The translations under genes and the position numbers were made by a program. 64,000 nucleotides of DNA, taken from positions 1 to 64,000 of the IMG/VR virus record IMGVR_UViG_3300023174_005338; one strand, written 5' to 3'. The notes below the pieces were generated by a model that saw only the letters and a list, made by a program, of their open reading frames with translations, made no database searches and was not told the origin of the DNA. This document shows, piece after piece, positions 4,354 to 62,723 of the stretch (positions within the stretch are counted from its first letter, which is position 1; each line of letters opens with the position of its first letter).

Positions 4354-4390
4354 ATTAGATCAGACAATTTATGGGCCTATAAATATCCAC

Positions 4391-5149
4391 ATGAATACTA
4401 TTGTGGTTGTATCAGGTGGGTTTGATCCCATACACTCTGGACACATAAAACTAATCAAAGAAGCACGAACTCTAGGCGATTATCTAATTGTGGGCATCAA
4501 CAGTGACGAATGGTTGGCCCGCAAAAAAGGCCGTGCATTCATGCCCTGGCAAGAGCGCCTGTGTGTGCTAAACAACCTGTCCATGGTAGACGAGGTTTAC
4601 ACCTTTGACGACGACGACGGCACTGCTTGTCATCTTTTACAACAGGTCCGCGCACACTATCCTGATGCACGCATTGTATTTGCCAACGGTGGTGATCGTA
4701 CTGCAAAAAATATTCCAGAAATGACAGTGCCTGACATAGAATTTGTGTTTGGCGTGGGCGGGTCGGACAAGTCCAATTCCAGTTCGTGGATACTTGAAGA
4801 GTGGCGAGCACCTAGAACACATCGTGTCTGGGGGTCCTACCGTGTGTTGTATGAAGCAGGCGCCGGAGTCAAGGTCAAAGAACTCACGGTAGAGCCTGGC
4901 CAACGACTCAGCATGCAACGCCATAAGTCGCGTGCTGAGCATTGGTTTGTGACCGAAGGTCAGGCCACAGTTTACACTATCAACAGGAAAAGCGACGCTG
5001 AACTCATGGGAGAATTTACCAAACATCAACACATACACATTGATCGTGAAGAATGGCATCAACTGTGCAACGAAACTGATCAACCTCTGCGGGTGGTAGA
5101 GATACAATATGGCGTGAATTGTGTAGAAGAAGACATAGAACGACTATGA
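4391..5149 (+). CDS. Cytidylyltransferase-like (HIGH) domain fused to a cupin (type II mannose-6-phosphate isomerase-like) domain
   Basis: SGGFDPIHSGH, GINSD, FANGGDR; C-terminal WGSY, LSMQRH..RAEHW, EIQYG..EEDIER. Start placed at ATG 4391 after TAAATA. Confidence 0.85.
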   Translation: MNTIVVVSGGFDPIHSGHIKLIKEARTLGDYLIVGINSDEWLARKKGRAFMPWQERLCVLNNLSMVDEVYTFDDDDGTACHLLQQVRAHYPDARIVFANGGDRTAKNIPEMTVPDIEFVFGVGGSDKSNSSSWILEEWRAPRTHRVWGSYRVLYEAGAGVKVKELTVEPGQRLSMQRHKSRAEHWFVTEGQATVYTINRKSDAELMGEFTKHQHIHIDREEWHQLCNETDQPLRVVEIQYGVNCVEEDIERL

Positions 5150-5829
5150 CACCAATTCCAATTTTTATCGGCTACGATCCCAGAGAAGCCATAGCATATC
5201 ATGTGTGCGTAAACAGCATCATCCGACATGCCACACAACCAGTGGCCATTGTGCCCGTGGCACTAAATCTGTTCCAAGACTACGAAGAAACACACGGCGA
5301 CAACAGCAATCATTTTGTGTACACCAGATTCCTAGTTCCACATCTCATGGGTTATCAAGGATGGGCCATATTCATCGATGGTGACATGGTGCTTAGAGAT
5401 GACATTGTCAAACTATGGAGCCTGCGTGAATATGACAAAGACGTCATGGTAGTCAAGCACGATTATAAAACAAGGATGGCAGAGAAATACATGGGCGCCA
5501 AAAACGAAGATTATCCCAGAAAGAATTGGTCCAGTGTGATCTTATGGAACTGCTCTAGTTGGCCCAACAGAAAACTCACACCGGACTTCGTTCAAAGTCA
5601 ACCCGGCAGTTACCTACACAGATTTTCGTGGTTGGATGACGCTCGCATTGGCGAACTGCCCATGGAATGGAATTGGTTGCCAGACGAACTTGGAGCCAAC
5701 GCTGATGCAAAACTTTTACATTACACCTTGGGCACACCTTGCTTCACTGAGTTTGCTGATACACCACAAGGCGAAGAGTGGCACAGAGAACGCATACTCA
5801 CCGAATACTGCCAACAAAGGATCTTATGA
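5146..5829 (+). CDS. GT-A fold glycosyltransferase (GT8-like)
   Basis: IFIGYDPRE, FVYTRFLVP, DGD (DxD), RKNWSSV, WNWL, LHYTLGTP. Confidence 0.85.
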   Translation: MTPIPIFIGYDPREAIAYHVCVNSIIRHATQPVAIVPVALNLFQDYEETHGDNSNHFVYTRFLVPHLMGYQGWAIFIDGDMVLRDDIVKLWSLREYDKDVMVVKHDYKTRMAEKYMGAKNEDYPRKNWSSVILWNCSSWPNRKLTPDFVQSQPGSYLHRFSWLDDARIGELPMEWNWLPDELGANADAKLLHYTLGTPCFTEFADTPQGEEWHRERILTEYCQQRIL

Positions 5830-6878
5830 CCTTGCCCATAGCCGTGGTCGAACGATGGCCCATGGAAGAATACAAGGTGCTGTACCCAGATCAGTGCATT
5901 GCGCTCAAGCACAGCGTGGCAGACACCTTGAAATTATACAATGAACTCCAACTGTTGCGACAGTTATTCCGGTTCGAAGATGACAAAGAGAGCAAACGTC
6001 TAGATAAAAATCTTGAACTGCTGATCAGAGAAAAAGAAGAACGGTATTTTAGACTGACCAAGTTTAGTGACTATCCAGCCATGACCATGGCTGCTTTCCC
6101 ACAAAGCAGTTTCATGACCAGTCACGATTATAAACGTGCCAAAGATGCAATCACAGATCCGATCTTGGTGCGTGGTATCAGCGCAGGCGCATACATCAAA
6201 CATGCTGAACAAAATGGCCGCGATTACTACTTTATGGAAACTGGTTATTTAGGTAACTATCGCAGCGAAAACAACAGAACTGGTAGAAAAATATATCACA
6301 GGATTGAAAAAAATGCCATGCAACAGCGTAGGTTTTTGGATGTGCCCGATGATCGGTGGCAAGCACTCTGCAGATACAATCCCGCACTGAGCTATCAAGG
6401 CTGGCGCAAAGATCCTGGATCAAAAATCCTGTTGATCATGAGCACAGAAAAACCTTTTCAGTTCTATGGTGCAGATAGAGACACTTGGATCAAAAACACC
6501 ATTGATACTATAAAACAACACACAGATCGACCCATAGTAATCAAGGACAAGCCCGGACGTGCTGAAAGAAACACCACAGACAACATATATGATATTCTGG
6601 AACAAGACATATGGGCCGTGGTCACTTACAACAGCATAGCAGCCGTAGAAGCCGTGCAGGTTGGTATTCCCAGCTTCAGTCTGGCTCCCACTGCAGCCAG
6701 TCTTGTCACCACCGACGATCTCAGTCTTATTGCTTGCCCGCCTCGAACCGATGAACAGGTGATCTACAAATGGTTGTGCAGTTTGGCCTATGGTCAATTC
6801 AGCATAGACGAAATCATAACCGGCCAAGCCTGGAATCTGGTACAAGAAAATGAGCACCGAACGACCTTTGATTATTAA
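5826..6878 (+). CDS. Capsular polysaccharide KpsS/KpsC-like GT-B protein
   Basis: ETGY, RPIVIKDKP, VVTYNSIAAVEAVQVGIP, W..LAYGQFS..EI..G.AW; paralog of 6850 and 9285. Confidence 0.65.
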   Translation: MTLPIAVVERWPMEEYKVLYPDQCIALKHSVADTLKLYNELQLLRQLFRFEDDKESKRLDKNLELLIREKEERYFRLTKFSDYPAMTMAAFPQSSFMTSHDYKRAKDAITDPILVRGISAGAYIKHAEQNGRDYYFMETGYLGNYRSENNRTGRKIYHRIEKNAMQQRRFLDVPDDRWQALCRYNPALSYQGWRKDPGSKILLIMSTEKPFQFYGADRDTWIKNTIDTIKQHTDRPIVIKDKPGRAERNTTDNIYDILEQDIWAVVTYNSIAAVEAVQVGIPSFSLAPTAASLVTTDDLSLIACPPRTDEQVIYKWLCSLAYGQFSIDEIITGQAWNLVQENEHRTTFDY

Positions 6879-8483: not shown

Positions 8484-9266
8484 ATATTTTTGTTGTTCTT
8501 GTTTGAATATAGCTAATTCTTTGCGTTTGCCTTTGGCCGACCATATTGCACTTTCGGGACGCATGGCCCAGTCAATGTAGCTCATGGGCAAGATTCCTTT
8601 GCGGTATTTGGGTACCAATTGATCTAAAACTACCTGATCCAGGAACCAGTAGATATCATTGCGTTCAATGTTTTCTCGCATGGCCTGGCCATAGGCCTGT
8701 AAAAAATCATGTGATCCTGTTTGTCCGTTAAACAAGATAGCCCCGGCTAGATGTGTGCCATCTTTGGGTTTTTCGTACAGGTAAAAATCACACTGTCCAA
8801 GATCAATGTTGAAAGTTGCACGAACCAGTCCATCTACATCAATTTCTAAACAGCGTTGTCCAGGTTGTAGAATTTCTGCCAATCTCACGAATCGCATGCA
8901 AGCAAAATAGGTTTGCCGGATCAATTTTATCAATTCGTCACGGCCGCCTACATGTCCCCTTTTCCACATTTGACGTTGACGATCATTGGCAAACTGTGTG
9001 CGATTTTGCCACTCAGTGGCGCAGTTTTCAAATTCCAAAGGATCAGTGATTTCCCAGGTGACACTGACTTGAGCATGTTGCTGACAATAAGCCAATTGTT
9101 CCTCGGTAGGATCATAGATGTGTATGTGAATGCCCAAGTTTGGGGTGTTTGCAAGTACGCTACGAATCAAAGCACGACCGTGGATGTCAAAATACACACG
9201 ATCTGCGGCTGCGTACACAAAAAATCCAGATTGATTGATAGTTCCTTGAATGGGAGATAGGTTCAT
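8478..9266 (-). CDS. GT-A fold glycosyltransferase-like protein
   Basis: YAAAD, RFVRL, DVD (DxD), LAG, WFLDQ, WSAKG; start set at ATG 9266 after the palindromic TAAATA. Confidence 0.7.
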   Translation of the reverse strand: MNLSPIQGTINQSGFFVYAAADRVYFDIHGRALIRSVLANTPNLGIHIHIYDPTEEQLAYCQQHAQVSVTWEITDPLEFENCATEWQNRTQFANDRQRQMWKRGHVGGRDELIKLIRQTYFACMRFVRLAEILQPGQRCLEIDVDGLVRATFNIDLGQCDFYLYEKPKDGTHLAGAILFNGQTGSHDFLQAYGQAMRENIERNDIYWFLDQVVLDQLVPKYRKGILPMSYIDWAMRPESAIWSAKGKRKELAIFKQEQQKYL

Positions 9267-9282
9267 GGTTAAATATTTAACC
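9267..9282. promoter_or_regulatory. Palindromic bidirectional late promoter GGTTAAATATTTAACC
   Basis: Perfect 16-bp palindrome with TAAATA on both strands, between divergent ATGs at 9266 and 9285. Confidence 0.7.
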
Positions 9283-9284
9283 TT

Positions 9285-10136
9285 ATGCGTGTGGCCTACT
9301 TTCCAAATCAGTGTGCTCAAAACAGCGGTCCTGTCGTGAAGGCCCTGCTGACCAGTTTGTACAACGCTGGGCACAAAGTTGTAGAAAATGATTTCGATGC
9401 TGATGCAGCCATCATATGGAGTGTGCTATGGTCCGGGCGCATGGCCGCCAATCAGGCAGTGTGGAGCCATTATAAAACACATAACAAACCATTGATTGTG
9501 GTTGATGTTGGGGCTCTTTATCGTGGCGAAACTTGGAAGATAGCCTTGAACTCAGTCACTTCCAATGGGTATTACGGGCACACAGAAAATCTAGATTGGG
9601 ACCGTCCAAGAAAATTGGGCATCAGTTTGGCCCTCAATTTCTCTAGAAATCCACGAATCGTGATAGCCGCACAACATGCCCGCAGTCTACAGACAGTGGG
9701 GTTGACCAGCATGGAAGGTTGGGTGATACAGCAGGTAGAACAGTTGCGCAAGGTCACAGACCGTCCTATCGTGGTACGCCCACATCCACGTAGTCCTTTG
9801 AACCGGTCCGGACTTGTGCATTTGCCCGCGGACGTGGTCATAGAACAACCAGCCCGAGTGGCCAATACCTATGACAGCTATAACTTGGCTTTTGAGTGTC
9901 ATGCCATGGTCAACCACAACTCGGGTCCGGGCATACAGGCGGCCTTGGCAGGAACCAGACCCATAGTAGATCGATCCAGCCTGGCCTATCCTGTGAGTAT
10001 AAAATTAGAAGACATTGAACAACCTTACACCGTGGACAGAGATCAGTGGCTGGTAGAAATTTGTCATACCGAATACACCGTGAATGAAATAAGTCGCGGC
10101 GTTTGGCTACAACGACTGGAATCACGTCTTGGATAA
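9285..10136 (+). CDS. Capsular polysaccharide KpsS-like GT-B protein
   Basis: RPIVVRPHP, MVNHNSGPGIQAALAG, RDQWLVEICHTEY..EISRG. Confidence 0.65.
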   Translation: MRVAYFPNQCAQNSGPVVKALLTSLYNAGHKVVENDFDADAAIIWSVLWSGRMAANQAVWSHYKTHNKPLIVVDVGALYRGETWKIALNSVTSNGYYGHTENLDWDRPRKLGISLALNFSRNPRIVIAAQHARSLQTVGLTSMEGWVIQQVEQLRKVTDRPIVVRPHPRSPLNRSGLVHLPADVVIEQPARVANTYDSYNLAFECHAMVNHNSGPGIQAALAGTRPIVDRSSLAYPVSIKLEDIEQPYTVDRDQWLVEICHTEYTVNEISRGVWLQRLESRLG

Positions 10137-10931: not shown

Positions 10932-10936
10932 ATGGC

Positions 10937-12374: not shown

Positions 12375-12406
12375 GATCTTGAACAGTAAATATGTTACAC
12401 TAGCAC

Positions 12407-13273
12407 ATGATCTTGACCATTGATCTCAGAGATTTGTCACTAAAATTTCGGGTATTGAAAACGCCCATAGCCCAATTATGGATTGAACGCATGAATCAGA
12501 GACATTCGTGGCCCATGGATGATCCCAAAAGATTTTACGGATTTAATACCCAAGAACAAGATGAACGAATTGCCTTGGCAAAGATACAGGAATGCATACA
12601 AGGAATTAATGCCTGGCAGCCGTTGATTACTAGATCGTTGTCTACAGTTTACGATCAAGATACATTAAACTATCTACACAACGTTTTTGAACAGTGGCAC
12701 GGTTTGTTAGATCAACATCCGATGCATCCAGAATATGGTCTTATACCTTCGGAAGTAAGACAACATTTGGCCAATTTAAATGTTGATGTTCACAGGTGCG
12801 AAAGTGCAGCACGTGGCAATCGCGCTAGATTTGTTTGCACTTGGTTTGGCATGCCCAAGACCAAAACGTTGCCGGTAGAAGTCATGCACAAATATGGAAC
12901 CTTAAATCCCAAGTTTGGTAGCGTGTGTTTGAACTATGCTGAGGTCGGCAAAACTCTGGAGGACCTCACACAAGATCGTGATAACTACATCAGTAACGAT
13001 GCGTTTTTACCGTTCAACCACTATTCAGCAGACTTCAATGTTCGCATGCACGAGGAAACTGCGGATTGTGTTGCTGACAAATTGGTCAGGATGCAGGCAT
13101 ACTACAACAAACACAGAGAGTTTTTCTTTGATCAAGGCTTTACCACATTCCAGGATCCTAGACTGTTGCCTTTGCGTTTTCCAGTGGCCGAACTCGTTGA
13201 AACTCAACCTAGAGATCAGTTAATAGAAACGATTAAGCAACATCAATACATCACACAAGTTACCCTACAATGA
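12407..13273 (+). CDS. Hypothetical protein, paralog of 1013..1834
   Basis: LNYLHNVFE, LNVDVHRCE, LNYAEVGKTLEDL, HYS. Confidence 0.7.
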   Translation: MILTIDLRDLSLKFRVLKTPIAQLWIERMNQRHSWPMDDPKRFYGFNTQEQDERIALAKIQECIQGINAWQPLITRSLSTVYDQDTLNYLHNVFEQWHGLLDQHPMHPEYGLIPSEVRQHLANLNVDVHRCESAARGNRARFVCTWFGMPKTKTLPVEVMHKYGTLNPKFGSVCLNYAEVGKTLEDLTQDRDNYISNDAFLPFNHYSADFNVRMHEETADCVADKLVRMQAYYNKHREFFFDQGFTTFQDPRLLPLRFPVAELVETQPRDQLIETIKQHQYITQVTLQ

Positions 13274-18053: not shown

Positions 18054-18401
18054 TTTTCTCTTGCTTTTTTTGCGGCTTATTTCGCTGAGACTGCATATGG
18101 GCCCGTGTAGTATTTCCAGATCCTTGTTGGTAAAGGTGCGCAGATAAGGACGAAAAATGTCCCACTCGCCTTTTAAGAATATGTTGATAGGCACAGTTCT
18201 GTTGCTTTCCCACCACCACACATTGGCCAGTTCAAGGAATCTGCGTTTGATTTCTATGTCTTGGATCGCTCCAAAATCATAGATCGTGGTTATGGCATCG
18301 TCTTGATTTTGAATGATACCCACATATTCCGTGGTAGCATACACACACAAGGTGATAAACGGATATTTCTCCGCTAGTTGGGCAAAAAAGTCTGTGCTCA
18401 T
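18024..18401 (-). CDS. Conserved phage hypothetical protein
   Basis: 125-aa ORF; TAAATA on minus strand 10 nt upstream. Confidence 0.7.
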   Translation of the reverse strand: MSTDFFAQLAEKYPFITLCVYATTEYVGIIQNQDDAITTIYDFGAIQDIEIKRRFLELANVWWWESNRTVPINIFLKGEWDIFRPYLRTFTNKDLEILHGPICSLSEISRKKSKRKSITLVRRVE

Positions 18402-18462
18402 AAGTCTAGGATATTTACCAAACCCTTTTTGTACCCTGTGCAGATCACGCTAAATACTCTGT

Positions 18463-24331: not shown

Positions 24332-24355
24332 ATAATAAAAAGGTCCTGGCCCAAA

Positions 24356-27231: not shown

Positions 27232-27271
27232 AAAGTAGGCCCATTGAGGCCATATATTAAGGAGATTTAAA

Positions 27272-44058: not shown

Positions 44059-44095
44059 TCTATCAACATTTGTATTGACCGGGAGCTAGTAAATA

Positions 44096-48509: not shown

Positions 48510-48519
48510 ATATTTGATT

Positions 48520-50118
48520 ATGTGGTTTGGCATACTCACTCTCGCAACCGCACTGATCATATCAGTCAGTGCCGCTTATTACAGCATACTTGGTCTCACA
48601 GCCATATTTGCCGCGGCCTTCTGGCCCATAGTGATCTTGGGTAGCAGCCTGGAAGTGGGCAAGATAGTAAGCACCCTGTGGTTGCACAAGTATTGGCACA
48701 GGGCAGAAATGCAGTACAAGATATATCTCAGTGCGGCCGTGGCCATACTCATGGTCTTGACCAGCATGGGTGTGTTTGGCTTCTTGAGCAAGGCACACTT
48801 GGATCAAGTCGTGCCGTCGGGCGACATACAGGCCCAGGTGCAGATCTATGATGACAAGATCAAGACACAGCGTGACAACATAGAAGCCGCCAGAAAGGCT
48901 CTGCGCCAGATGGACGAAGCCGTGGATCAGACCATGAGTCGTAGCAGTAGCGAACAAGGAGCAGACAAAGCTGCCAACCTGCGCCGCAGCCAGGCCCGTG
49001 AACGTGGCAATCTACAGAACGACATTTCACGAGCACAGAGTGAGATCACCAAACTACAAGAACAACGAGCACCCATAGCCAGCCAGGCTCGCCAGATTGA
49101 AGCCGAAGTGGGTCCTATCAAATACATTGCCGCACTCATATATGGTGACAATCCTGATGCCAATCTGTTAGAAAAAGCAGTTCGCTGGATGATCATACTG
49201 ATTGTCATAGTGTTTGATCCACTAGCCCTGACCCTGTTGCTGGCCGCTACCAAGACCTTTGAATGGGAACGTGAAAATAAACTCAAGGACACGCATGAGG
49301 ATCCAGATCCAGATGTAGGATCTTGGTTTGATCGAGCCCGCGAGCGTGCCAGATTCTGGGACCAACAACAAAAAGAAAAACCAACTCCATGGCCATTTCC
49401 CCGACAGTTTGAAGGCATACGATCAGGTCAAGGCCAATGGATGCAGACCGGTCCTGAACTTGATGTCCCCGACGAGCAAGAACCTGTCAAATCTCAACCT
49501 ACTGTAAAACAATCTGTGTTGGCCGGTCTAGACAGCATGTGGGCCCGTGCCAAAAAACTGGCACGGCGAGATTCCGAAGCCGAACATGCACCATTAGACA
49601 CATCTGCGAACAAGCCATTGCCAACCCCAGTTGCAGAAGAGGACAACGACACATCAGAAAAGTTTGCTGAACGTGCATGGAAATCTGAAAATCCCAACGA
49701 CACTCTCAAACGCCAACGAGATCTATTGGACGCTGGCCTGATCGCAGAACTACCTTGGAATGAAGACCGATTTCAGACTCAGGTTTTGGGTCAACAAAGA
49801 ATTCAAGCCGACAATGTGCCCACTGGTGCCACCGGCGAAGTGCGAGGGTTTGGTACCAGTTTTCCGGCTGATGCCAAAAAAGGTGACATGTTTCTAAGAG
49901 TGGATCGCTTGCCCAGTGGACTTTACAAGTACAACGGCACCATGTGGATCGAGGTAGACAAATCCTTGAGCGACAGCCATGCCTGGGACGATGCCTACAT
50001 TGACCACCTCATAGCCAAGATAGGATCTGGCGAATATGATCCTGACTTGCTGAGTGATGCCGAACGTGATCGTATTGAGGCCAAACTAAAAACTGATCCT
50101 TCGTCGGGCTTGGCATGA
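48520..50118 (+). CDS. Membrane-anchored coiled-coil protein
   Basis: Three N-terminal TMs, coiled coil, EVGPIKYIA, further TM, long C-tail with FP...GD.FLR.D..P motif. Confidence 0.75.
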   Translation: MWFGILTLATALIISVSAAYYSILGLTAIFAAAFWPIVILGSSLEVGKIVSTLWLHKYWHRAEMQYKIYLSAAVAILMVLTSMGVFGFLSKAHLDQVVPSGDIQAQVQIYDDKIKTQRDNIEAARKALRQMDEAVDQTMSRSSSEQGADKAANLRRSQARERGNLQNDISRAQSEITKLQEQRAPIASQARQIEAEVGPIKYIAALIYGDNPDANLLEKAVRWMIILIVIVFDPLALTLLLAATKTFEWERENKLKDTHEDPDPDVGSWFDRARERARFWDQQQKEKPTPWPFPRQFEGIRSGQGQWMQTGPELDVPDEQEPVKSQPTVKQSVLAGLDSMWARAKKLARRDSEAEHAPLDTSANKPLPTPVAEEDNDTSEKFAERAWKSENPNDTLKRQRDLLDAGLIAELPWNEDRFQTQVLGQQRIQADNVPTGATGEVRGFGTSFPADAKKGDMFLRVDRLPSGLYKYNGTMWIEVDKSLSDSHAWDDAYIDHLIAKIGSGEYDPDLLSDAERDRIEAKLKTDPSSGLA

Positions 50119-51314
50119 CAAACAAAATTGAACACTGTAGTTTTTGCGACAAACACAAGGATCTGGTTGGCAAATTGATTGTGAGTCAGGCAGTGGCCAT
50201 ATGCAACGAATGTGTGGCCTTGTGTGACAATTTGTTGAAAGACGTCAAACCCTCTACAAAATCCAAATTTAAACAGATTGGTGTGTTGGATCCCTTGGAC
50301 ATATTGATGTACCTTGATGAATACGTGATTGGACAAGATCAAGCCAAACGAGTGCTGGCAGTTGCCATTGCCAATCACTATAAGCGTATCAGCCGACCTG
50401 GCACAGATCTACAAAAGGTCAACATAATGATGCTTGGTCCCACCGGTACCGGAAAAACTTTGTTGGCTCGCACAGTGGCTCGATATTTGCAAGTGCCATT
50501 CGTGATTGCAGATGCAACTTGTTTGACCGAAGCAGGTTATGTAGGCGATGATGTAGAAAGCATGATAGCCAGATTATACACTGCTGCCAATGGAGATGTA
50601 GAAGCCTGTCAGCGTGGCATTGTGTTCCTGGATGAAATAGACAAAATTGCTAGAAAAGGCGAAAGTGCCACAGTCAGCCGAGATGTCAGTGGCGAGGGCG
50701 TGCAACAGGCTTTGCTCAAACTGATTGAAGGCACCCGTTGTAGGATTCCAGCACAAGGCTCTAGAAAAAATTCTGGCACAGAAATGATTGAAATAGACAC
50801 TGCCAATATTCTGTTTATAGCCAGTGGTGCATTTGTGGGTCTGGAGAGAATCATACAGAATCGAGTACAAGGCACTGCCATGGGATTTGGTGCACAGCTT
50901 GACCGCGCCATTGAATCAACCATGGAGAAAATTATACCCGACGATCTGGTCAGATATGGCATGATTCCAGAATTCGTGGGCAGATTTGGTAGTTGTGTGA
51001 ATTTACATGATCTTGACAAGTCTCAGTTGATCAATATATTGACACAGGTCCGGGGAAACTTTGTCAAACAGTATCAATGGCTGTTTGAAGAAGACGGAGT
51101 TGAACTCAACTTTGATGCAGAAAGTCTGGATATCATTGCCGAACGCACACTGAAAAGCCGAACTGGTGCACGTGGCCTGCATAGCGAACTTGAACGAGTG
51201 TTGTTGCCGCACATGTTTGATTTGCCACGCTATCGACGTCAAAATATACTGGCCGTCACGATCAATAAAACCCAGGTAAATACACCCATGACACTGGCAC
51301 AGGAAAATTCGTGA
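50115..51314 (+). CDS. clpX: ClpX unfoldase
   Basis: Zinc-binding [38 protein letters not shown] loop, TGARGL. Confidence 0.95.
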
Positions 51315-51532
51315 GAGAGTACAAGAGATCGGTAGTTGTCAAGGACGACAACGTGGAACGTGCTCTGCGCAAGTTCAAGAAAAAGATACAGGAATCCGGA
51401 CTCTTGGATGAACTGCGAGGTCGCGAAACCTACGAAAAACCCACCACTGAACGCAAACGCAAAAAAGGTGCGGCCCGTGCCCGCTGGCGCAAACGGCTGA
51501 GAGATCAGCAGTTGCCCAAAAAACTCTACTGA
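51311..51532 (+). CDS. rpsU: Ribosomal protein bS21
   Basis: [13 protein letters not shown]...[15 protein letters not shown]. Confidence 0.93.
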
Positions 51533-52275: not shown

Positions 52276-52333
52276 TATAATGTAGTAAATACAGTGGAGG
52301 GCATGGGCTCTCCACTACTAACAAGGATCCACG

Positions 52334-52642
52334 ATGTCGCAAGCTGGCACAGTCACAAAAACAAAAATCAATCACGACATGGCAGAACCACCCATGTTCA
52401 AGGTCATTTATCTCAACGACAATGCCACACCCATGGACTTTGTGATAGAAACACTGATAGACAGTTTCAACTACAATCAACAGACAGCAGTGCAGATCAC
52501 ACATGATATACATGAAGCAGGAAGTGCGGTAGTAGCTGTGCTTCCTTATGAAATAGCTGAACAAAAAGGCATAGAAGTCACAGTGCAAGCTCGCAGCAAC
52601 AACTATCCTTTACAGGTCAAACTGGAACCTGAAACAGTCTAA
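52334..52642 (+). CDS. clpS: ClpS N-degron adaptor
   Basis: PPMFKVIYLNDNATPMDFV, IHEAG, EIAEQK, YPL. Confidence 0.92.
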   Translation: MSQAGTVTKTKINHDMAEPPMFKVIYLNDNATPMDFVIETLIDSFNYNQQTAVQITHDIHEAGSAVVAVLPYEIAEQKGIEVTVQARSNNYPLQVKLEPETV

Positions 52643-53434
52643 TCAAATTTCTATCACTATTCTTTGTGGGTAATAAGCCTGTTGACACCACGTAGTGTGG
52701 CCACGTCCACGAGGATTGCTAACATATCTGATTCCGTTCAGATCTCGATCCACAGGTCTATGATAGTGCCCAAAACACCAGGTGTGTATTTTGTTTTCCG
52801 TATCTTTGCTCAGCACGCCAGAGATGTAACTATTGCCCATGCCGTTGTATCTCCAGTTGCCTATCAAGTCCGGATCATGTGACACAATCCAAGGAGCAGG
52901 CACAGTATGGCTGACTATGACCATGGCTCTTACTTCTCTGTGTGTTTGCAGTTTGCGTACACTGTTGATCATGTAAGCGGCATCATTGTAGGCCACTCCT
53001 GTTATGTTCGTGGCTGCGGCATTGTCTATTCCATGATGATCTTGTATGGCCTGCACACTGGATTCTACATCCATGCTGGGATCAAAATCATAGGTCCACC
53101 AACCATTGGTTCCTAACAGAGCCACGCCGTTGATTATGATCACATTGTCCTGCATGTAAACTACATTTTTTATGTGTTTGAGATCTGCGTCCAGATCCTT
53201 GTAACTGGCTCCCAGATCATCAAGATAATCTTTGTGTTCTTCGTTGCCGTCCACATAAAACACACCACCTGGATAACATTGACCAAGATGATCCAAAGTA
53301 TCCAACAAGCGTTCGCGGTTGCGGGCCACATCTCCGGCAACCACACAATAAGGACTGGTGGCCTGTCCGGCCCAGTCAAATGTATTCCAGGTTTCCACGT
53401 GTAGATCAGAAATTAAATCAAAGGCAAATTGCAT
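52643..53434 (-). CDS. Calcineurin-like metallophosphoesterase
   Basis: SDLH, AGDV, GNEEH (variant of GNH), SH, GHYH, NPRG. Confidence 0.85.
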   Translation of the reverse strand: MQFAFDLISDLHVETWNTFDWAGQATSPYCVVAGDVARNRERLLDTLDHLGQCYPGGVFYVDGNEEHKDYLDDLGASYKDLDADLKHIKNVVYMQDNVIIINGVALLGTNGWWTYDFDPSMDVESSVQAIQDHHGIDNAAATNITGVAYNDAAYMINSVRKLQTHREVRAMVIVSHTVPAPWIVSHDPDLIGNWRYNGMGNSYISGVLSKDTENKIHTWCFGHYHRPVDRDLNGIRYVSNPRGRGHTTWCQQAYYPQRIVIEI

Positions 53435-53460
53435 GATAACTATTTACAGAGGATTTGATC

Positions 53461-53811: not shown

Positions 53812-53859
53812 TCTAGATAAATACCCACATAACAACAAGACTCTAAAAAGGAGCTAAAA

Positions 53860-54138
53860 GTGGGTGAATTTTTCAAGCTAGTCGCAGAACTAGGATTTCC
53901 AATAGCGGCAGCAATCGCAGCCGGATACTTTGTATTTCTCACATTGAAGTTTATTCTTGCTGGTGTAACCAGCAGTGTAAAAGGCATGGCCGGCATCATC
54001 GGCGCCTTGGACAAGCGTGTGGCCACCATGAATCATGATGTTATGCGCATTGACACAAAAGTTTCGCATGCGCTGGGTCTACAACCTGACTTGGATCGCA
54101 TAGCTCGAGCTGAACAAAGTGACGCCAGGAGAGACTAA
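53860..54138 (+). CDS. YvrJ/holin-like membrane protein
   Basis: GFPIAAA.G.F TM plus coiled coil; paralog of 54761. Confidence 0.7.
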   Translation: MGEFFKLVAELGFPIAAAIAAGYFVFLTLKFILAGVTSSVKGMAGIIGALDKRVATMNHDVMRIDTKVSHALGLQPDLDRIARAEQSDARRD

Positions 54139-55039: not shown

Positions 55040-55090
55040 AACCATCACTTAATAGCAGTATATTTCTAGTAAATACTACCAGGAGCTAGA

Positions 55091-55531
55091 ATGAAAAAAA
55101 TAATAATAAGTGTTCTGGCCAGCGTCGCTACATCCACGGTCAGCGCACAACTGGTACATCAGTTTAACTCGCCATCCTTTTCAGGATCGGGCTACAGCAG
55201 CCATGTCTTGACCATCGAGCAACTGGAAGCCACACGCCGTAAAGCCATAGCTGATGCACAAAAAGCCGCACAGGAAAAGGCCGAACGCGATGCCAAAAAT
55301 ACCAACTTGGCCAAGTTCTTGGTCAACGTGGAAAGTCGTATCTACGCACAACTTTCAAAACAGTTGGCAGATGCCATGTTTGCCGAAGGCGGTGCCAACT
55401 CTGGCAGTTTTGATTTCCAAGGCACCAACATCAGTTATGTGAAAACTGGCACAGATGTGACCTTGACCATCATTGAGGCCAACGGAAACAGGACCGAAAT
55501 CACTGTGCCCTTGTCGAGTTTTAGTTTCTGA
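55091..55531 (+). CDS. csgF: Curli assembly CsgF-like protein
   Basis: Signal peptide, LVHQFNSPSFSG (cf. F..PSFGG), RI..QLS, G..TEI.VP; directly upstream of csgG. Confidence 0.8.
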   Translation: MKKIIISVLASVATSTVSAQLVHQFNSPSFSGSGYSSHVLTIEQLEATRRKAIADAQKAAQEKAERDAKNTNLAKFLVNVESRIYAQLSKQLADAMFAEGGANSGSFDFQGTNISYVKTGTDVTLTIIEANGNRTEITVPLSSFSF

Positions 55532-58704: not shown

Positions 58705-58776
58705 CTGTGTCGATATAAAAACTATAAGGAATCGACCCAGCTACATATTCAAAAGCCCCCGCGAGGGGCTTTTTTT
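58705..58776 (+). ncRNA. Candidate small RNA
   Basis: TAAATA at 58699-58704, GTCGAT/ATCGAC hairpin with A-rich AAGGA loop, then terminator; no ORF. Confidence 0.45.
58751..58776 (+). terminator. Rho-independent terminator
   Basis: AAAAGCCCC-CGCGA-GGGGCTTTT plus T-run. Confidence 0.85.
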
Positions 58777-58794
58777 ATCTAAGTTAAATATAAC

Positions 58795-60810
58795 ATGCTG
58801 AAAAAAATCCTAACTAGCCCCTGGACTGCTCTAATAACATTGGCAGTTATAGTAGCAATACGCATAGCGGATCCTGCATTTGTAGAAAGTGTTCGCTTGC
58901 GTTATTTTGATACCTTGGTGACCAGCAAGCCCGCAGAAGTCACAGGTGTTCATGTTGTAAATATTGATGAAAAGGCTTTAGAACGATATGGTCAGTTTCC
59001 CTTCGCCAGAAATGTATATGCTGGCATCATCCAAGATCTTTATCGCCGCAACGCTGGTCTTGTTGTTTTTAATATTCTTACTCCTGATCGCGATCGCATG
59101 GGTCGCGATGCGGCGTATGTGGCGGCGTTGCAAAAACATGCTACGGTTCTTCCAAGCATAGGCAGCACAGCGACTCGTAACCAACCTAGGAATCCCGGAA
59201 GTGCGGTGATCGGTCCCCTGGATACTAACAATTTTGTGACCTATCCTGGAATCATTGCCAACATACCTGCTGTGGAACGTGCGGCCATAGGCGTAGGTAT
59301 CACTAACACCTTGCCCGAGATAGATGGTGTGGTACGTAGAATGCCCATGGTAGTGGCTGTTGATGGTAAGTTATATCCCAGTCTGGCCATGGAAGTCATG
59401 CGTGTGGCCGCAGGTGACTCGACTTTCCAAGTCAAAGTAAATGAACAGGGCGTGGAAAAAATGCGTATTCCACAGTTTGGCCCAGTGAGTACAGATAGCC
59501 TCAGCAGGATCTGGATTGACTGGAGCCTGACTCCAGAACGTCACGGCTTAACCGACTTGCCCCAGGACTTTGATGGCGAGATAGTTATTGTGGGAGTCAG
59601 TGCCGCAGGCCTGTCCAATCCTGTGGCCACCAGCCTGGGTGAGATGTTGCCACAAGACTTGCAAGCCGCTGTGATATCAACAGTGATAGCCAACAAGATC
59701 AGACCAGCTATTACTCGTCCTGACTGGGCAGATGGTGCAGAGATAATCACCTTGGTCGTGCTTGCGGTGACATTGATATTTTTAGGGAGATGGACCTATG
59801 TTGGTATTGCTGGCAGTGTTGTTGTCATTGGTATTTGTGTTTGGGTTCCTGGTGCTTTGTACTCGAGCCATGCTTGGCTCACTGACGTCACTTTGGTTGT
59901 TGGGGGTCTTGTTGCTGTGCTTCTGCATGCTTATGGAGTACGGTTTGTATCAGAGTATCTTGCTAAACAACAAATAAAGAAACAGTTTGGCACCTACTTG
60001 AGTCCGGCCATGGTCGAGAAACTTCAGAAGAATCCAGAACTGCTGAAGTTGGGCGGTGAAAGCAGAGAGTTGAGTATCATGTTCACTGATGTGCGTGGCT
60101 TTACTACCATCAGCGAACACTACGGTGCCGACGTTCAAGGACTGACCAAGATCATGAACAGATATATGACAGCCATGACCGCCAAAATCATAGAGAACGA
60201 AGGTACCTTGGACAAGTACATAGGTGATGCACAGATGGCATTTTGGAATGCACCCTTGGATGACGCTGATCATGCTGTCAATGCTGTGCGTACTGCTTTA
60301 CAAATGATGGAGAGTTTGGATGAGTTCAATCGTGAAATCAGTGCAGAAGGCATTCCGCCTTTTGGCATGGGCCTTGGCATCAATACTGGTACCGTGGTCG
60401 TTGGTAATATGGGCAGCGATCAGCGTTTTGATTACACCTGCCTTGGTGACAGCGTTAATCTGGCGAGCCGACTCGAAGGCCAGTCAAAACCTTATGGCGT
60501 TCGCATCATACTGGGACCGCGTACTAGTGAGCTTGTCAGAGATTCCTACCCAGTTGCGGAACTAGACTGCATAGCAGTAAAAGGCAAGACCGAAGGCGTC
60601 CGCATATATACACTGGCAGAAGAAACACAGTTGCACAAAGATTTTATCACCTTGTATTACGCTGGCGAATGGAAACAAGCACAGGCCTTGATTCCAGGAT
60701 GCATCAAAGCCTGCCCAGAACTGGAGGCATATTATGGGGCCATGGATGAACGACTTGCGGCAGGTAAGCCAGATGACTGGATGGGAACCTATAAGGCTAC
60801 ATCTAAATGA
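58795..60810 (+). CDS. CHASE2-domain class III adenylyl cyclase
   Basis: N-terminal TM; CHASE2 (VVNIDE..L..YGQFP..R, DGVVRR.P); three TMs; FTDVRGFT, DKYIGD, GINTG, DYT.LGD.VNLASRLE. Confidence 0.93.
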   Translation: MLKKILTSPWTALITLAVIVAIRIADPAFVESVRLRYFDTLVTSKPAEVTGVHVVNIDEKALERYGQFPFARNVYAGIIQDLYRRNAGLVVFNILTPDRDRMGRDAAYVAALQKHATVLPSIGSTATRNQPRNPGSAVIGPLDTNNFVTYPGIIANIPAVERAAIGVGITNTLPEIDGVVRRMPMVVAVDGKLYPSLAMEVMRVAAGDSTFQVKVNEQGVEKMRIPQFGPVSTDSLSRIWIDWSLTPERHGLTDLPQDFDGEIVIVGVSAAGLSNPVATSLGEMLPQDLQAAVISTVIANKIRPAITRPDWADGAEIITLVVLAVTLIFLGRWTYVGIAGSVVVIGICVWVPGALYSSHAWLTDVTLVVGGLVAVLLHAYGVRFVSEYLAKQQIKKQFGTYLSPAMVEKLQKNPELLKLGGESRELSIMFTDVRGFTTISEHYGADVQGLTKIMNRYMTAMTAKIIENEGTLDKYIGDAQMAFWNAPLDDADHAVNAVRTALQMMESLDEFNREISAEGIPPFGMGLGINTGTVVVGNMGSDQRFDYTCLGDSVNLASRLEGQSKPYGVRIILGPRTSELVRDSYPVAELDCIAVKGKTEGVRIYTLAEETQLHKDFITLYYAGEWKQAQALIPGCIKACPELEAYYGAMDERLAAGKPDDWMGTYKATSK

Positions 60811-60959: not shown

Positions 60960-61397
60960 CTAGTTGACAGGTATTCTCAGTCTAAAGCCAATGGCACTGG
61001 CACCTGTGCTGTCAACCCTAGGCAAAATCAAGGTACAGGCCCACTTATAACAGGCTTCAGGAAAGGCCATGGGCAACACTGCGGCACGTTGGTATCCAGT
61101 GACGGCACCCACAGCAATGCCAATATCCCAACCATCCTTTTTATAAACCGCATAACGACCATAGGCATAGGTGCTGCCACTGTATTCTGAATTGCGGTAC
61201 CAGCCTCCGGCTACAGATATCCTGTCGGTGATACCTTGCTCTAGTCCAGCACCCCAGTTGAAACCATTGTATCCAGACCGGTCATGGACACTGATGCCAT
61301 TGACCTGTACATAGGTTTGAGCCGACAAACTATTTGCAACGACAAAAAACAACACACCCAAACAGTATTTTGAATTGTATAGAATTTTTTTTATCAT
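60960..61397 (-). CDS. PagP-like outer-membrane beta-barrel
   Basis: Signal peptide; S.H.R..YN..NWG.G, Y.NS, G.VTGY, P. Confidence 0.55.
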   Translation of the reverse strand: MIKKILYNSKYCLGVLFFVVANSLSAQTYVQVNGISVHDRSGYNGFNWGAGLEQGITDRISVAGGWYRNSEYSGSTYAYGRYAVYKKDGWDIGIAVGAVTGYQRAAVLPMAFPEACYKWACTLILPRVDSTGASAIGFRLRIPVN

Positions 61398-61404
61398 GTA
61401 GAAA

Positions 61405-62694
61405 TTACTTTTTATCAAAATTATCAACAAAGTGTTGCATTATTTTAGGAAGGTTAGTAGTCGACCAATAATGTTGTAGTTCTGGCATCTTTTGTAGTTC
61501 AGCGAATCTGACAATTTCTTTTTCAAAGTCTGGATACATTTTAAGAGTGTCAAAAGCACAATCAAAGTTTTGCTTTAACTCATCTATCACAAAATTAAAA
61601 AAATTTTCACTAAAAAAATGTGTTTGATTATGAAGAACTATCTGTTCTATCTGTTGCATTTTACTGAATTTTTCTTCGGGGCTCCAGGCATTTATGGTTT
61701 TCATCAGCTGTATTATGGTCAGCATACGATCATAGGGATCCTCAATGCTGTCATAGCTTTCGTCCCAAACCAAGTCAAAGGTCTTGAATCCATATTCTTT
61801 CAAATACTGCAAACTGCCATGTGTGGCAACTAATATAAAAGGTTGACCGCATGCTATAGGACGTAGAATTTTTTCAGTCAAGTGTAATCGATCGTCATCG
61901 AACAAGGTTTCCAACACCACTTCGATTTCAGTGCAGTTATAATCTCTTGAATCAAAATCTCCACTGGCCGTAGACAAAGCAGTGGTCTTGGGCACATGAT
62001 GCTCCAGCACATGTTCTGGTCGCCAAACAGGATTATGAAAGTTATAGTCAGAGTAGTGTATATCTGTGTCGGAATCCACAGGGTTACAGTGGGTCAGGCA
62101 TTGATCAACCAGTTGATGCGTGATCAGTAGATCCGTAAATTTCAGTCTATATTCTCTGGTGCCGGTCCAGGCGCGATTGTATATTAAAAATTTCTTTTTG
62201 CTATTTTTCTTAAAAACTTCGTGTTGCGCATATCTAAACCAATCTCTAGCTATGATTGCATGACTCCAGTAGTAGACCGACAACAATTGACTTTGATGAT
62301 TGGCCGGAGGCTCGAGATATTTTTCTAAATTTTTTGACCTGCGTTCACTGTGCAGTAACAGGCTTTTACCAAATAAATTTTTTCGAAAATTTATGTTAAA
62401 GGCAGGTTTGGCCAAGTTCAGATCATTTAAAATTTGCACCAGTTTTGCGGGTAAAATATCGTCTGATTTTTGTTGTTGATTCAATCGTTCATAATCTAGT
62501 GCTTCTTGGTCGTGGCAAAAAACAATTGGCCATAAAAAATTTGCCAAAAAAGATTCATGTTCTCTCAATGGCAACAATTGATCAATATTTTTTGCACCAT
62601 CTGGATAAAAACGATAAATTAATACACGCCCATCATAGCTGTGACAGGCAATATTGTCAATAAAATGATACAGACTATCTAATGGAACACTCAT
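61405..62694 (-). CDS. GT-B/GT10-like glycosyltransferase-like protein, paralog of 15711..16799
   Basis: VVLET..LTEK..RPI..GQPF..L..YGFKTF..WDESYD.IED. Confidence 0.6.
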   Translation of the reverse strand: MSVPLDSLYHFIDNIACHSYDGRVLIYRFYPDGAKNIDQLLPLREHESFLANFLWPIVFCHDQEALDYERLNQQQKSDDILPAKLVQILNDLNLAKPAFNINFRKNLFGKSLLLHSERRSKNLEKYLEPPANHQSQLLSVYYWSHAIIARDWFRYAQHEVFKKNSKKKFLIYNRAWTGTREYRLKFTDLLITHQLVDQCLTHCNPVDSDTDIHYSDYNFHNPVWRPEHVLEHHVPKTTALSTASGDFDSRDYNCTEIEVVLETLFDDDRLHLTEKILRPIACGQPFILVATHGSLQYLKEYGFKTFDLVWDESYDSIEDPYDRMLTIIQLMKTINAWSPEEKFSKMQQIEQIVLHNQTHFFSENFFNFVIDELKQNFDCAFDTLKMYPDFEKEIVRFAELQKMPELQHYWSTTNLPKIMQHFVDNFDKK

Positions 62695-62723
62695 AGCAGA
62701 TTATATATTTACTTGAATGATCA

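What the first reader, a model, noticed from the sequence alone, without database searches (positions are those of the whole stretch)
4380..62711. Genome-wide TAAATA late motif, often driving apparently leaderless mRNAs, in a bS21-encoding phage
TAAATA lies 4-11 nt upstream of starts lacking an SD at 4391, 9266(-), 9285, 18401(-), 18463, 27759, 48520, 53434(-), 58795 and 62694(-). Other late genes (27272, 40217, 53860, 55091) have SD leaders. The motif resembles T4 TATAAATA, which starts transcription a few nt downstream. Two late mRNA classes alongside a phage bS21, an initiation-affecting ribosomal protein, suggest a translational switch.
Basis: partly seen in the sequence, partly recalled or inferred. 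Interest (0 to 1): 0.6.

Follow-up and report, generated by a model that had tools for sequence, protein, structure and literature searches.

The report
Late promoters abutting start codons
In this 337-kb T4-related giant phage the six-base box TAAATA is almost certainly the late promoter, and at about 35 genes it sits 4-9 bases before the ATG, so those late messages should have essentially no leader; the arrangement is conserved in relatives but does not track the phage's ribosomal protein bS21.

Summary
TAAATA is the most enriched hexamer in gene-upstream DNA of the whole 337-kb genome (19-fold, p 3e-73). It is about 3-fold depleted inside genes on both strands. Its distance to the start codon is bimodal. 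About 35 genes have it 4-9 nt upstream, nearly all with ATG starts and no Shine-Dalgarno (SD). About 31 have it 17-28 nt upstream with an SD in between. Almost none lie at 10-16 nt.

The genome encodes a gp55-type late sigma factor, and the SD-led class includes tail sheath, baseplate and fibre genes. T4 geometry (box at -13 to -6) puts +1 on the A of ATG when the gap is 5 nt.

Both classes are conserved gene by gene in a relative with about 61% protein identity and unrelated flanking DNA. The portal gene switches between the two layouts among 79 relatives. The cultured Pelagibacter phage HTVC008M has at least ten annotated gene starts, nine of them virion genes, exactly 5 nt after TAAATA.

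The proposed bS21 switch is not supported. A complete relative without bS21 keeps the leaderless class, while PA5oct and Atu_ph07 have bS21 but no such class. No RNA data could be obtained, so transcription starts remain inferred.

The parts
4380..4393 (+). Leaderless-type unit. TAAATA 4380-4385, 5-nt gap, ATG 4391. The gene is a cytidylyl/adenylyl-transferase-like protein (4391-5149).
   Evidence: PHROG. The G002 orthologue also has a gap of 5 with unrelated flanks.
9264..9279 (-). Leaderless-type unit on the minus strand. TAAATA 9274-9279, 7-nt gap, ATG at 9266. It overlaps the plus-strand box in the palindrome TAAATATTTA.
   Evidence: The divergent starts are only 18 nt apart.
9270..9287 (+). 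Leaderless-type unit. TAAATA 9270-9275, 9-nt gap, ATG 9285.
   Evidence: The G002 orthologue lacks the box, so this one is weaker.
18399..18417 (-). Short-gap unit. TAAATA 18412-18417, 10-nt gap, ATG at 18401.
   Evidence: The G002 orthologue has a gap of 6.
18451..18465 (+). Leaderless-type unit. TAAATA 18451-18456, 6-nt gap, ATG 18463. The protein has a virion/baseplate-like domain.
   Evidence: The G002 orthologue has a gap of 7.
27749..27761 (+). Leaderless-type unit. TAAATA 27749-27754, 4-nt gap, ATG 27759.
   Evidence: The G002 orthologue has a gap of 7.
48507..48522 (+). Leaderless-type unit. TAAATA 48507-48512, 7-nt gap, ATG 48520. Weak match to a virion structural protein.
   Evidence: The G002 orthologue has a gap of 7.
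53432..53446 (-). Leaderless-type unit. TAAATA 53441-53446, 6-nt gap, ATG at 53434. The gene is a metallophosphoesterase.
   Evidence: The G002 orthologue instead has an SD and GTG with no box.
58751..58780 (+). Intrinsic terminator: a 9-bp GC-rich stem followed by a T run. It ends about 5 nt before the next late box.
58785..58797 (+). Leaderless-type unit. TAAATA 58785-58790, 4-nt gap, ATG 58795. The gene is an adenylate/guanylate-cyclase-like protein. It lies directly after the terminator, so its transcript must start within about 15 nt of the ATG or come from read-through.
   Evidence: The HTVC008M and Melnitz homologues also start 5 nt after TAAATA.
62692..62711 (-). Borderline unit. TAAATA 62706-62711, 11-nt gap, ATG at 62694. 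A possible sigma70-like TTGACA and TATA-rich -10 overlap it.
24329..24358 (+). SD-led late unit. TAAATA, 21-nt leader region, ATG 24356. The gene is a virion structural protein. The TAA of the box is the stop codon of the upstream gene.
27226..27274 (+). SD-led late unit. TAAATA, 40 nt containing AAGGAG, ATG 27272.
28428..28453 (+). SD-led late unit. TAAATA, 17 nt containing GGAG, ATG 28451.
29130..29161 (+). SD-led late unit. TAAATA, 23 nt, ATG 29159. The gene is a virion structural protein.
30377..30422 (+). SD-led unit. TAAATA, 37 nt containing AAGGAG, ATG 30420. The gene is NifU-like.
31834..31868 (+). SD-led late unit. TAAATA, 26 nt, GTG 31866. The protein is tail fibre/spike-like.
40162..40219 (+). 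SD-led unit. TAAATA, 49 nt, ATG 40217.
51277..51532 (+). bS21 gene with its own TAAATA. The box is at 51277-51282, AGGAAA at 51301-51306 and GTG at 51311. The coding region runs 51311-51532.
52286..52336 (+). SD-led unit. TAAATA, 42 nt, ATG 52334. The gene matches PHROGs annotated 'ATP-dependent protease'. A TATAAT box lies just upstream.
53818..53862 (+). SD-led unit. TAAATA, 36 nt containing AAGGAG, GTG 53860.
55070..55093 (+). SD-led unit with a minimal leader. TAAATA, 15 nt containing AGGAG, ATG 55091.
44090..44107 (+). Ambiguous. TAAATA directly abuts ATG 44096 (gap 0) and lies 9 nt before ATG 44105 of the DNA ligase gene. A GGAG lies upstream of the box.
12387..12409 (+). Intermediate case. 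TAAATA, 14-nt gap, ATG 12407, no SD.

Best explanation
TAAATA is the core of this phage's late promoter. It is a -10-type box with no -35 element, read by host RNA polymerase carrying the phage's gp55-like late sigma (encoded at genome positions 271635-272537, outside the window).

Transcription should start about 6 nt after the box, as in T4. Where the box lies 4-9 nt before an ATG (about 35 genes, ten in the window), the late mRNA begins at or within 0-4 nt of the AUG. It carries no Shine-Dalgarno sequence and must be translated as a leaderless message. Where the box lies 17-28 nt or more upstream (about 31-50 genes), the mRNA has a minimal leader that just fits an SD.

The likely purpose is inferred, not shown. 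In a genome where 85% of genes point the same way, read-through transcripts from upstream cannot be translated at an SD-less internal AUG. A leaderless gene is therefore expressed only when its own late promoter fires. T4 gets the same outcome for genes e, soc, 49 and I-TevI with RNA hairpins. Abundant proteins (sheath, baseplate wedge, and the capsid operon) keep SDs. The portal, homing endonucleases and enzymes use the leaderless form.

The phage bS21 gene is itself a late, SD-led gene. The leaderless class does not require it.

Shown: the statistics, spacing, conservation, the sigma homologue and the gene content. Inferred: the start point, the leaderless translation and the insulation role.
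For: **Enrichment and depletion**
- Top hexamer near starts and in upstream DNA.
- Three-fold depletion inside genes on both the sense and antisense strands. This argues for a DNA-level signal rather than an mRNA element.

**Motif anatomy**
- No conserved flanks and no -35.

**Spacing**
- Bimodal, with a trough at 10-16 nt, in G000 and G002.
- Every start at a gap of 4-9 in the scan is ATG. A second scan found 29 ATG and 2 GTG at gaps 3-9.
- 33 of 36 short-gap genes lack an SD.

**Late transcription machinery**
- gp55-like sigma: T4 gp55 E 2e-7, phrog_12791 E 4e-63, PA5oct late sigma E 4e-60. It is followed by an SbcD-like gene, as in PA5oct.

**Gene content**
- SD-led TAAATA genes: tail sheath, baseplate wedge, fibres.
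- Leaderless-type genes: portal, virion proteins, two homing endonucleases.

**Single-locus evidence**
- A terminator lies immediately before the 58785 box and the 58795 ATG.
- Divergent starts 18 nt apart share the palindromic box at 9270-9279.

**Conservation**
- In G002 (median 61% protein identity), 19 of 27 leaderless-type genes stay leaderless, 21 of 27 led genes stay led, and 153 of 163 genes without a box stay without one.
- Portal gene in 79 relatives: 40 have TAAATA-N7-ATG, about 30 have TAAATA with an AAGGA leader, and 8 have none.
- HTVC008M shows a sharp peak at a gap of 5. At least ten GenBank-annotated starts lie exactly 5 nt after TAAATA, nine of them baseplate, tail, head-closure or other virion genes.

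**Literature**
- The T4 box occupies -13 to -6, has no -35, and phage Aeh1 varies at -13/-12 (PMC2988020).
- T4 restricts translation of e, soc, 49 and I-TevI to late transcripts (PMC3014915).
Against: - There are no RNA data.
- gp33 and a gp45-type sliding clamp were not detected with T4 profiles or phmmer. A clamp loader is present.
- Several motif-bearing genes are metabolic or auxiliary genes rather than virion genes.
- Gaps of 9-11 nt (9285, 18401, 62694) would leave 4-6-nt leaders. These are not strictly leaderless.
- A few short-gap sites overlap the stop codon of a co-oriented upstream gene. Translational coupling could serve there.
- The host is unknown, so its capacity for leaderless translation is unknown.
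Confidence: 0.62

Rival explanations
1. TAAATA is the late promoter, but at short-gap sites the genes are translated mainly from longer transcripts. There the A/U-rich box, now in the mRNA, would act as an SD-independent ribosome landing site (for example bound by bS1), or the gene would be translated by termination-reinitiation coupling. On this view the mRNAs are not truly leaderless.
For: - 25 of 36 short-gap genes have a co-oriented upstream gene, and 9 of those gaps are 11 nt or less.
- The 4-9 nt spacing resembles typical SD-to-start spacing.
Against: - The motif is equally depleted on the antisense strand of genes. An mRNA element would not cause that.
- 11 short-gap genes are divergently oriented, and one follows a strong terminator.
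- A strict hexamer with only one tolerated variant is unlike a loose A/U-rich enhancer.
- The same box with an SD inserted occurs at orthologous portal genes.
Confidence: 0.15
2. The phage bS21 remodels host ribosomes late in infection and switches translation between the leaderless and SD-led late mRNA classes.
For: - bS21 is present in G000, has its own TAAATA, and is thus probably late.
- HTVC008M and Melnitz also encode bS21. HTVC008M has a clear set of TAAATA-N5-ATG starts and Melnitz a weak one.
- bS21 contacts the anti-SD region (PMC9723584, PMC10491246).
Against: - Complete relative G002 lacks bS21 but keeps the leaderless class and the bimodal spacing.
- PA5oct and Atu_ph07 have bS21 without any excess of short-gap sites.
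- E. coli ribosomes that lack uS2 and bS21 are the ones that favour leaderless mRNA.
Confidence: 0.1
3. TAAATA is a -10-like element read by a host sigma factor rather than by the phage gp55-like protein. The motif would then mark constitutive or early genes, not late ones.
For: - It is A/T-rich and -10-like.
- Some sites overlap or adjoin TATAAT or TTGACA-like sequences.
- Some motif-bearing genes are enzymes.
Against: - It lacks the conserved T at the last -10 position and has no -35 or extended -10.
- TATAAT is enriched separately.
- The box precedes sheath, baseplate, fibre and portal genes.
- The genome carries a gp55 homologue. The same box precedes structural genes in PA5oct, Atu_ph07 and HTVC008M.
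Confidence: 0.07
4. The pattern is a by-product of A/T-rich intergenic composition and stop codons (the TAA within TAAATA).
For: - Intergenic DNA is A/T-rich.
- In a few cases the TAA of the box is the upstream stop codon.
Against: - Same-composition permutations score 2-15 against 35.
- Shuffles never reach the observed values.
- Most short-gap boxes are fully intergenic or lie in divergent regions.
- Orthologues keep the box while the flanks diverge.
Confidence: 0.01

Closest known systems
Bacteriophage T4 late promoter (TATAAATA, read by gp55 with gp33 and the gp45 clamp)
   Same: - A -10-positioned A/T box with no -35 element.
- A phage-encoded gp55 homologue.
- The box lies upstream of virion genes on either strand.
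- The core TAAATA is identical.
- The phage belongs to the T4 superfamily by its portal.
   Different: - Only six bases are conserved. The T4 positions -13/-12 are free here; a variation at those positions is reported for Aeh1 (PMC2988020).
- gp33 and a gp45-type clamp were not detected.
- In T4, PA5oct and Atu_ph07, TAAATA-N4-8-ATG is not enriched. Here about 40% of start-proximal boxes abut the ATG.
Leaderless mRNAs of bacteria and phages (lambda cI from PRM; the -10-box-at-fixed-distance signature that GeneMarkS-2 models in Actinobacteria and Deinococcus)
   Same: - A -10-type box at a fixed short distance from an AUG.
- No SD.
- ATG at every start with a gap of 4-9.
   Different: - Here the promoter is a phage late promoter read by a phage sigma, not the host housekeeping promoter.
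- The class forms a conserved late regulon of about 35 genes in a T4-type phage.
- The 5' ends are not mapped.
T4 translational restriction of genes e, soc, 49 and I-TevI to late transcripts by RNA hairpins
   Same: - The proposed outcome is the same: only transcripts begun at the gene's own late promoter are translated.
- Homing endonucleases are among the genes treated this way in both phages.
   Different: The means differ. T4 hides the SD/AUG of read-through RNA in a hairpin. This phage would simply omit the SD. The insulation role is inferred here, not tested.
Late-expressed bS21 of large Bacteroidetes phages (Chen et al. 2022, PMC9723584)
   Same: A phage bS21 gene that appears to be expressed late.
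   Different: - That is a different phage group (31-34% GC, Bacteroidetes hosts that ignore SD).
- Here bS21 presence does not track the leaderless class.
Pelagibacter phage HTVC008M and Methylophilales phage Melnitz (cultured T4-like aquatic phages)
   Same: - TAAATA-N5-ATG at annotated structural gene starts.
- They share the cyclase-like gene, which has the same arrangement.
- Both encode bS21.
   Different: - Much smaller genomes (141-147 kb) in a different family (Kyanoviridae).
- In HTVC008M the gap is almost always exactly 5 nt, with a GTA-rich spacer.
- I found no published mention of the arrangement in the held library.

Membership tests
T4-type (gp55-dependent) late promoter | A/T-rich box with the core TAAATA of TATAAATA | tested here: met
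   The hexamer was fixed by the search. The two positions before it, which are TA in T4, are not conserved. Only TAAGTA appears as a tolerated variant.
T4-type (gp55-dependent) late promoter | No conserved -35 element | tested here: met
   No information content from -40 to -1 relative to the box in 38 sites.
T4-type (gp55-dependent) late promoter | Phage encodes a gp55 homologue | tested here: met
   Genome 271635-272537: T4 gp55 E 2e-7, phrog_12791 E 4e-63, PA5oct late sigma E 4e-60.
T4-type (gp55-dependent) late promoter | Box precedes virion structural (late) genes | tested here: met
   Sheath, baseplate wedge, fibres, portal and virion proteins. It also precedes some enzymes.
T4-type (gp55-dependent) late promoter | gp33 co-activator present | tested here: inconclusive
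   phrog_254 and phmmer with T4 and Syn9 gp33 found nothing. The protein is small and diverges fast.
T4-type (gp55-dependent) late promoter | gp45-type sliding clamp as activator | tested here: inconclusive
   phrog_223 and phmmer with T4 gp45 found nothing. A gp44-type clamp loader is present at 119683-120546, so a divergent clamp is likely.
T4-type (gp55-dependent) late promoter | Transcription starts about 6 nt after the box, and late in infection | not testable with these tools
No reads were laid.
Leaderless mRNA | Promoter -10-type box at a fixed short distance from the start codon | tested here: met
   Sharp peak at gaps of 4-5, range 4-9, trough at 10-16.
Leaderless mRNA | No Shine-Dalgarno sequence | tested here: met
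   33 of 36 short-gap genes have no SD at -5 kcal/mol. In any case there is physically no room for one.
Leaderless mRNA | AUG, rather than GUG or UUG, as start codon | tested here: met
   All starts at gaps 4-9 are ATG in the unbiased list. A second scan gave 29 ATG and 2 GTG at gaps 3-9.
Leaderless mRNA | Mapped 5' triphosphate end at or next to the AUG | not testable with these tools
   No RNA data available.
   G002 has no bS21 but has the leaderless class. PA5oct and Atu_ph07 have bS21 but no such class.

The most novel reading that the evidence does not exclude
A conserved regulon of truly leaderless late mRNAs exists in aquatic T4-superfamily phages: this abundant jumbo clade (at least 599 metagenomic contigs) and, independently, pelagiphage HTVC008M. 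It would be made by fusing the gp55-type late promoter directly to AUG codons. Translation of these genes would then be hard-wired to promoter choice and insulated from read-through transcription. Lineages toggle individual genes, such as the portal, between leaderless and SD-led forms.
Probability: 0.55. Interest if true: 0.7.

Novelty: new variant of a known kind. Interest (0 to 1): 0.55.

Why it matters
The late promoter itself is ordinary for a T4 relative. What looks unreported is the systematic placement of that promoter 4-9 nt from ATG, which implies dozens of leaderless late mRNAs.

- I found no description of this for T4-type phages in the held literature. That search covers only the held library.
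- If true, it would be a simple way for a large, mostly one-directional phage genome to tie translation to its own late promoters.
- It would be a natural system for studying leaderless initiation in Proteobacteria-type hosts.
- It gives a practical rule for calling starts and promoters in a very abundant group of uncultured giant phages.
- It separates phage bS21 from that mechanism, which narrows the hypotheses about what viral bS21 does.
- HTVC008M offers a cultured system in which the prediction can be tested.

Tried and rejected
- **Close relatives among deposited phages.** Megablast of 44096-48009 against deposited phages found no match.
- **gp33 and gp45.** PHROG profiles and phmmer found neither. 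Scanning the clamp-loader neighbourhood did not reveal a clamp.
- **Host inference.**
  - The bS21 search returned mixed metagenome-assembled hits: short Crocinitomicaceae and Chitinophagales contigs, Burkholderiales, and many Gemmatimonadota at 61-65% identity. This is inconclusive.
  - The permuted tmRNA tag hints at a proteobacterial host, but only weakly.
- **A at +4.** Proposed as a leaderless recognition signal in lambda cI. It is not enriched in the short-gap genes (17 of 36 against 179 of 362, p 0.86).
- **One-mismatch variants.** Only TAAGTA (5 of 47 copies at the leaderless position) stands above background.
- **bS21 association.** Tested across ten genomes and rejected as a requirement.
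- **Identity with the Chen et al. 2022 bS21 phages.** Rejected on GC content and host.
- **Chance or composition.** Rejected.

Full report
**What the window is**

The window is the first 64 kb of a 337,119-bp phage genome with direct terminal repeats, from IMG/VR. GC content is 46%. A simple coding-potential gene call gives 398 genes, 338 of them on the plus strand. The portal protein (genome 286839-288662) is T4-type and 49-52% identical to those of the jumbo phages Phosso, Atu_ph07, PA5oct and XaC1. The phage is therefore a distant member of the T4 superfamily. No near-identical deposited phage exists. At least 599 IMG/VR contigs carry a portal related to this one; the best 80 are 75-94% identical.

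**Checking the observation**

The window has 40 TAAATA copies against 25.5 +/- 4.8 in dinucleotide shuffles. Position gives the stronger tests:
- Among all 4096 hexamers, TAAATA is the one most often found 0-14 nt upstream of a candidate start. This applies to 42 of its 164 genomic copies (p 3e-30), on a par with AAGGAG.
- TAAATA-N4-8-ATG opens an ORF of at least 50 codons 35 times. The fourteen permutations of the same letters do so 2-15 times.
- In 18.8 kb of oriented upstream non-coding DNA it is the most enriched hexamer: 82 copies, 19-fold, p 3e-73. TATAAT follows at 8.5-fold and AAGGAG at 14-fold.
- Inside genes it is depleted about three-fold in both orientations: 30 and 30 copies against 82.7 +/- 8.9 and 89.6 +/- 10 in codon shuffles.

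Depletion on the antisense strand is what a DNA-level signal such as a promoter predicts. An mRNA-level signal would not produce it.

**Anatomy**

Aligned on the box, 38 start-proximal sites show no conserved base from -40 to -1 or downstream. The signal is a bare hexamer without a -35 element. Of the one-mismatch variants, only TAAGTA rises above background.

The distance from the box to the chosen start codon is sharply bimodal:

| Gap (nt) | Genes | Features |
|---|---|---|
| 4-9 (peaks at 4-5 and 7) | 35 | No SD, ATG starts |
| 10-16 | 4 | Trough |
| 17-28 (peak at 18) | 31 | GGA/GGAG 6-9 nt before the start |
| Above 28 | Thin tail | |

An unbiased scan gives the same shape. In the first class every start at a gap of 4-9 is ATG, and 33 of 36 genes lack an SD. 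The second class has the shortest leader that can still hold an SD.

**Who reads it**

- T4 gp55 matches a 300-residue ORF at 271635-272537 (E 2e-7).
- That ORF matches the PHROG 'sigma factor for late transcription' at E 4e-63 and the annotated PA5oct late sigma at E 4e-60.
- As in PA5oct, an SbcD-like gene follows it.
- A gp44-type clamp loader is present.
- gp33 and a gp45-type clamp were not detected with T4-based profiles. I leave these inconclusive.

According to the T4 literature, the late promoter is an 8-bp box at the -10 position. Its first two bases are numbered -13/-12, there is no -35 element, and phage Aeh1 varies at -13/-12 (PMC2988020). The box therefore spans -13 to -6. A 5-nt gap places the A of ATG at +1, and gaps of 4-9 predict leaders of about 0-4 nt.

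**What the genes are**

- **SD-led TAAATA genes:** tail sheath, a 1144-residue baseplate wedge protein, several fibre-like proteins and virion structural proteins.
- **Capsid module:** it follows PA5oct synteny. The probable major capsid gene (291643-292839) has a strong SD and sits in an operon behind the TAAATA that lies 32 nt upstream of the 288995 start. The capsid assignment rests on synteny only.
- **Short-gap genes:** the portal, several virion proteins, two homing endonucleases, cytidylyltransferase-like and phosphoesterase-like enzymes, and a cyclase-like protein.

'Late' is thus well supported for many motif-bearing genes but is an inference for the enzymes.

**Local evidence in the window**

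- A strong intrinsic terminator (58751-58773 plus a T run) ends about five bases before the box at 58785, which lies 4 nt from ATG 58795. A transcript for this gene must either start in those roughly 15 bases or read through the terminator.
- At 9270-9279 two boxes overlap as the palindrome TAAATATTTA. They lie between divergent starts only 18 nt apart.
- Eleven short-gap genes genome-wide are divergently oriented. Most of the rest have boxes that are fully intergenic. Only a few overlap an upstream stop codon.

**Comparative evidence**

- **Portal gene in 79 related contigs.** 40 have TAAATA-N7-ATG with otherwise unrelated upstream sequence. About 30 have TAAATA 17-27 nt upstream with AAGGA in between. 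8 have no box. The same gene thus toggles between the two layouts while keeping the box.
- **G002.** This is a complete 346,856-bp relative with about 61% median protein identity. Classes are conserved gene by gene: 19 of 27 short-gap genes stay short-gap, 21 of 27 led genes stay led, and 153 of 163 genes without a box stay without one. The flanks are fully diverged. G002 shows the same bimodal spacing.
- **Five relatives.** All show an excess of the pattern over a reversed-pattern control.
- **PA5oct and Atu_ph07.** TAAATA precedes structural genes, but with SD leaders. The short-gap pattern is not enriched there or in T4, Syn9 or S-PM2.
- **HTVC008M.** This cultured pelagiphage has a sharp peak at a gap of exactly 5. 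At least ten GenBank-annotated starts lie exactly 5 nt after TAAATA. They are baseplate wedge proteins, the tail tube cap, head closure, the DNA end protector, the tape measure, CsgF, the cyclase homologue and a 2OG-Fe(II) oxygenase.
- **Literature.** I found no paper in the held library describing leaderless late mRNAs in T4-type phages. The PA5oct paper reports only sigma70-like promoters. The Melnitz paper searched only for TATAAAT.

**bS21**

The gene (51311-51532, Pfam E 1.5e-16) starts with GTG, preceded by AGGAAA. It lies 28 nt after a TAAATA, so it belongs to the SD-led class.

| Genome | bS21 | Short-gap class |
|---|---|---|
| G000 | yes | yes |
| G001 | yes | yes |
| HTVC008M | yes | yes |
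| Melnitz | yes | weak |
| PA5oct | yes | no |
| Atu_ph07 | yes | no |
| G002 (complete) | no | yes |
| T4 | no | no |
| Syn9 | no | no |
| S-PM2 | no | no |

The leaderless class therefore neither needs nor follows bS21. Structural work on lambda cI reports that ribosomes lacking uS2 and bS21 favour leaderless mRNA, and that bS21 supports the anti-SD region (PMC10491246). Extra bS21 would be expected to help SD-led initiation, if anything. The bS21 phages of Chen et al. are a different, low-GC Bacteroidetes group.

**Mechanism proposed**

Host polymerase carrying the gp55-like sigma opens at TAAATA and starts about 6 nt downstream. Short-gap genes then yield 5'-AUG messages translated without an SD. 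Led genes yield 12-20-nt leaders with an SD.

I infer a reason for the first class. In a mostly one-directional genome, an SD-less internal AUG is silent on read-through RNA. Such genes are therefore expressed only from their own late promoter. T4 achieves the same result for genes e, soc, 49 and I-TevI by sequestering the SD/AUG in a hairpin (PMC3014915). Two homing endonucleases fall into the short-gap class here. Abundant virion proteins keep SDs.

This functional reading, the start point and the timing are inferences.

**Limits**

- No RNA data could be obtained.
- The host is unknown.
- My gene starts come from a simple in-house caller. The key statistics were repeated without it.

**Verdict**

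It is best read as a T4-type late promoter with a conserved and apparently undescribed leaderless subclass. The bS21 switch is not supported.

Noticed in passing
G000 genome 196326-205977 (outside the window; loci L009 and L010): The phage carries a permuted (two-piece) tmRNA at 196894-197230 with tag peptide ANASNDETFALAA. It also carries five tRNAs (Met, Cys, Trp, Glu, Thr). The tag style hints at a proteobacterial host. The window itself has no tRNA.
   Followed up: partly
window 51277-51314: The TAAATA before bS21 is followed after 5 nt by an ATG (51288). This ATG is in frame with the last 8 codons of the upstream gene. That frame ends at a TGA overlapping the bS21 GTG start (GTGA). A late transcript might therefore begin with a leaderless 8-codon mini-frame coupled to bS21. 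This is speculative.
   Followed up: no
window 58795-60810, with L178 and L179: The cyclase-like gene is 36-37% identical to genes of Pelagibacter phage HTVC008M and Methylophilales phage Melnitz. In those phages it sits at the end of a curli-like cluster (CsgF/CsgG, curlin repeats, FecR). All three start 4-5 nt after TAAATA.
   Followed up: partly
window 9270-9279: The palindrome TAAATATTTA gives one box on each strand for two divergent genes whose ATGs are only 18 nt apart.
   Followed up: yes
G000 genome 292962-293720 and 324440-325072 (L014, L016): Two homing endonuclease genes (one of them GIY-YIG type) have the short-gap TAAATA-ATG layout. One lies directly after the probable capsid gene, as in PA5oct.
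   Followed up: partly
whole genome, e.g. window 52270-52281 and 27738-27747: TATAAT or TACAAT boxes are the second independent enriched upstream hexamer (8.5-fold). They often lie next to TAAATA, which suggests tandem sigma70-type (early) and late promoters, as in T4.
   Followed up: partly
L103 (PA5oct 61215-102804) and L104 (Atu_ph07 140109-181752): In both cultured jumbo phages, (A)TAAATA lies 18-40 nt upstream of many structural genes with an SD in between. The PA5oct paper lists only sigma70-like promoters. Both phages also encode bS21.
   Followed up: partly
window 30420-30803, 33899-37337, 52334-52642, 4391-5149: Auxiliary genes are present in the window: a NifU-like Fe-S assembly protein, class I ribonucleotide reductase large and small subunits, a small protein matching PHROGs annotated 'ATP-dependent protease', and a cytidylyl/adenylyl-transferase-like protein.
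   Followed up: no
L105-L108 (bacterial MAG contigs): The closest bS21 matches in 'bacterial' genomes sit on MAG contigs of about 4.5 to 34 kb (Crocinitomicaceae, Chitinophagales, Proteobacteria, Burkholderiales). The shortest of them may be mis-binned phage DNA.
   Followed up: no
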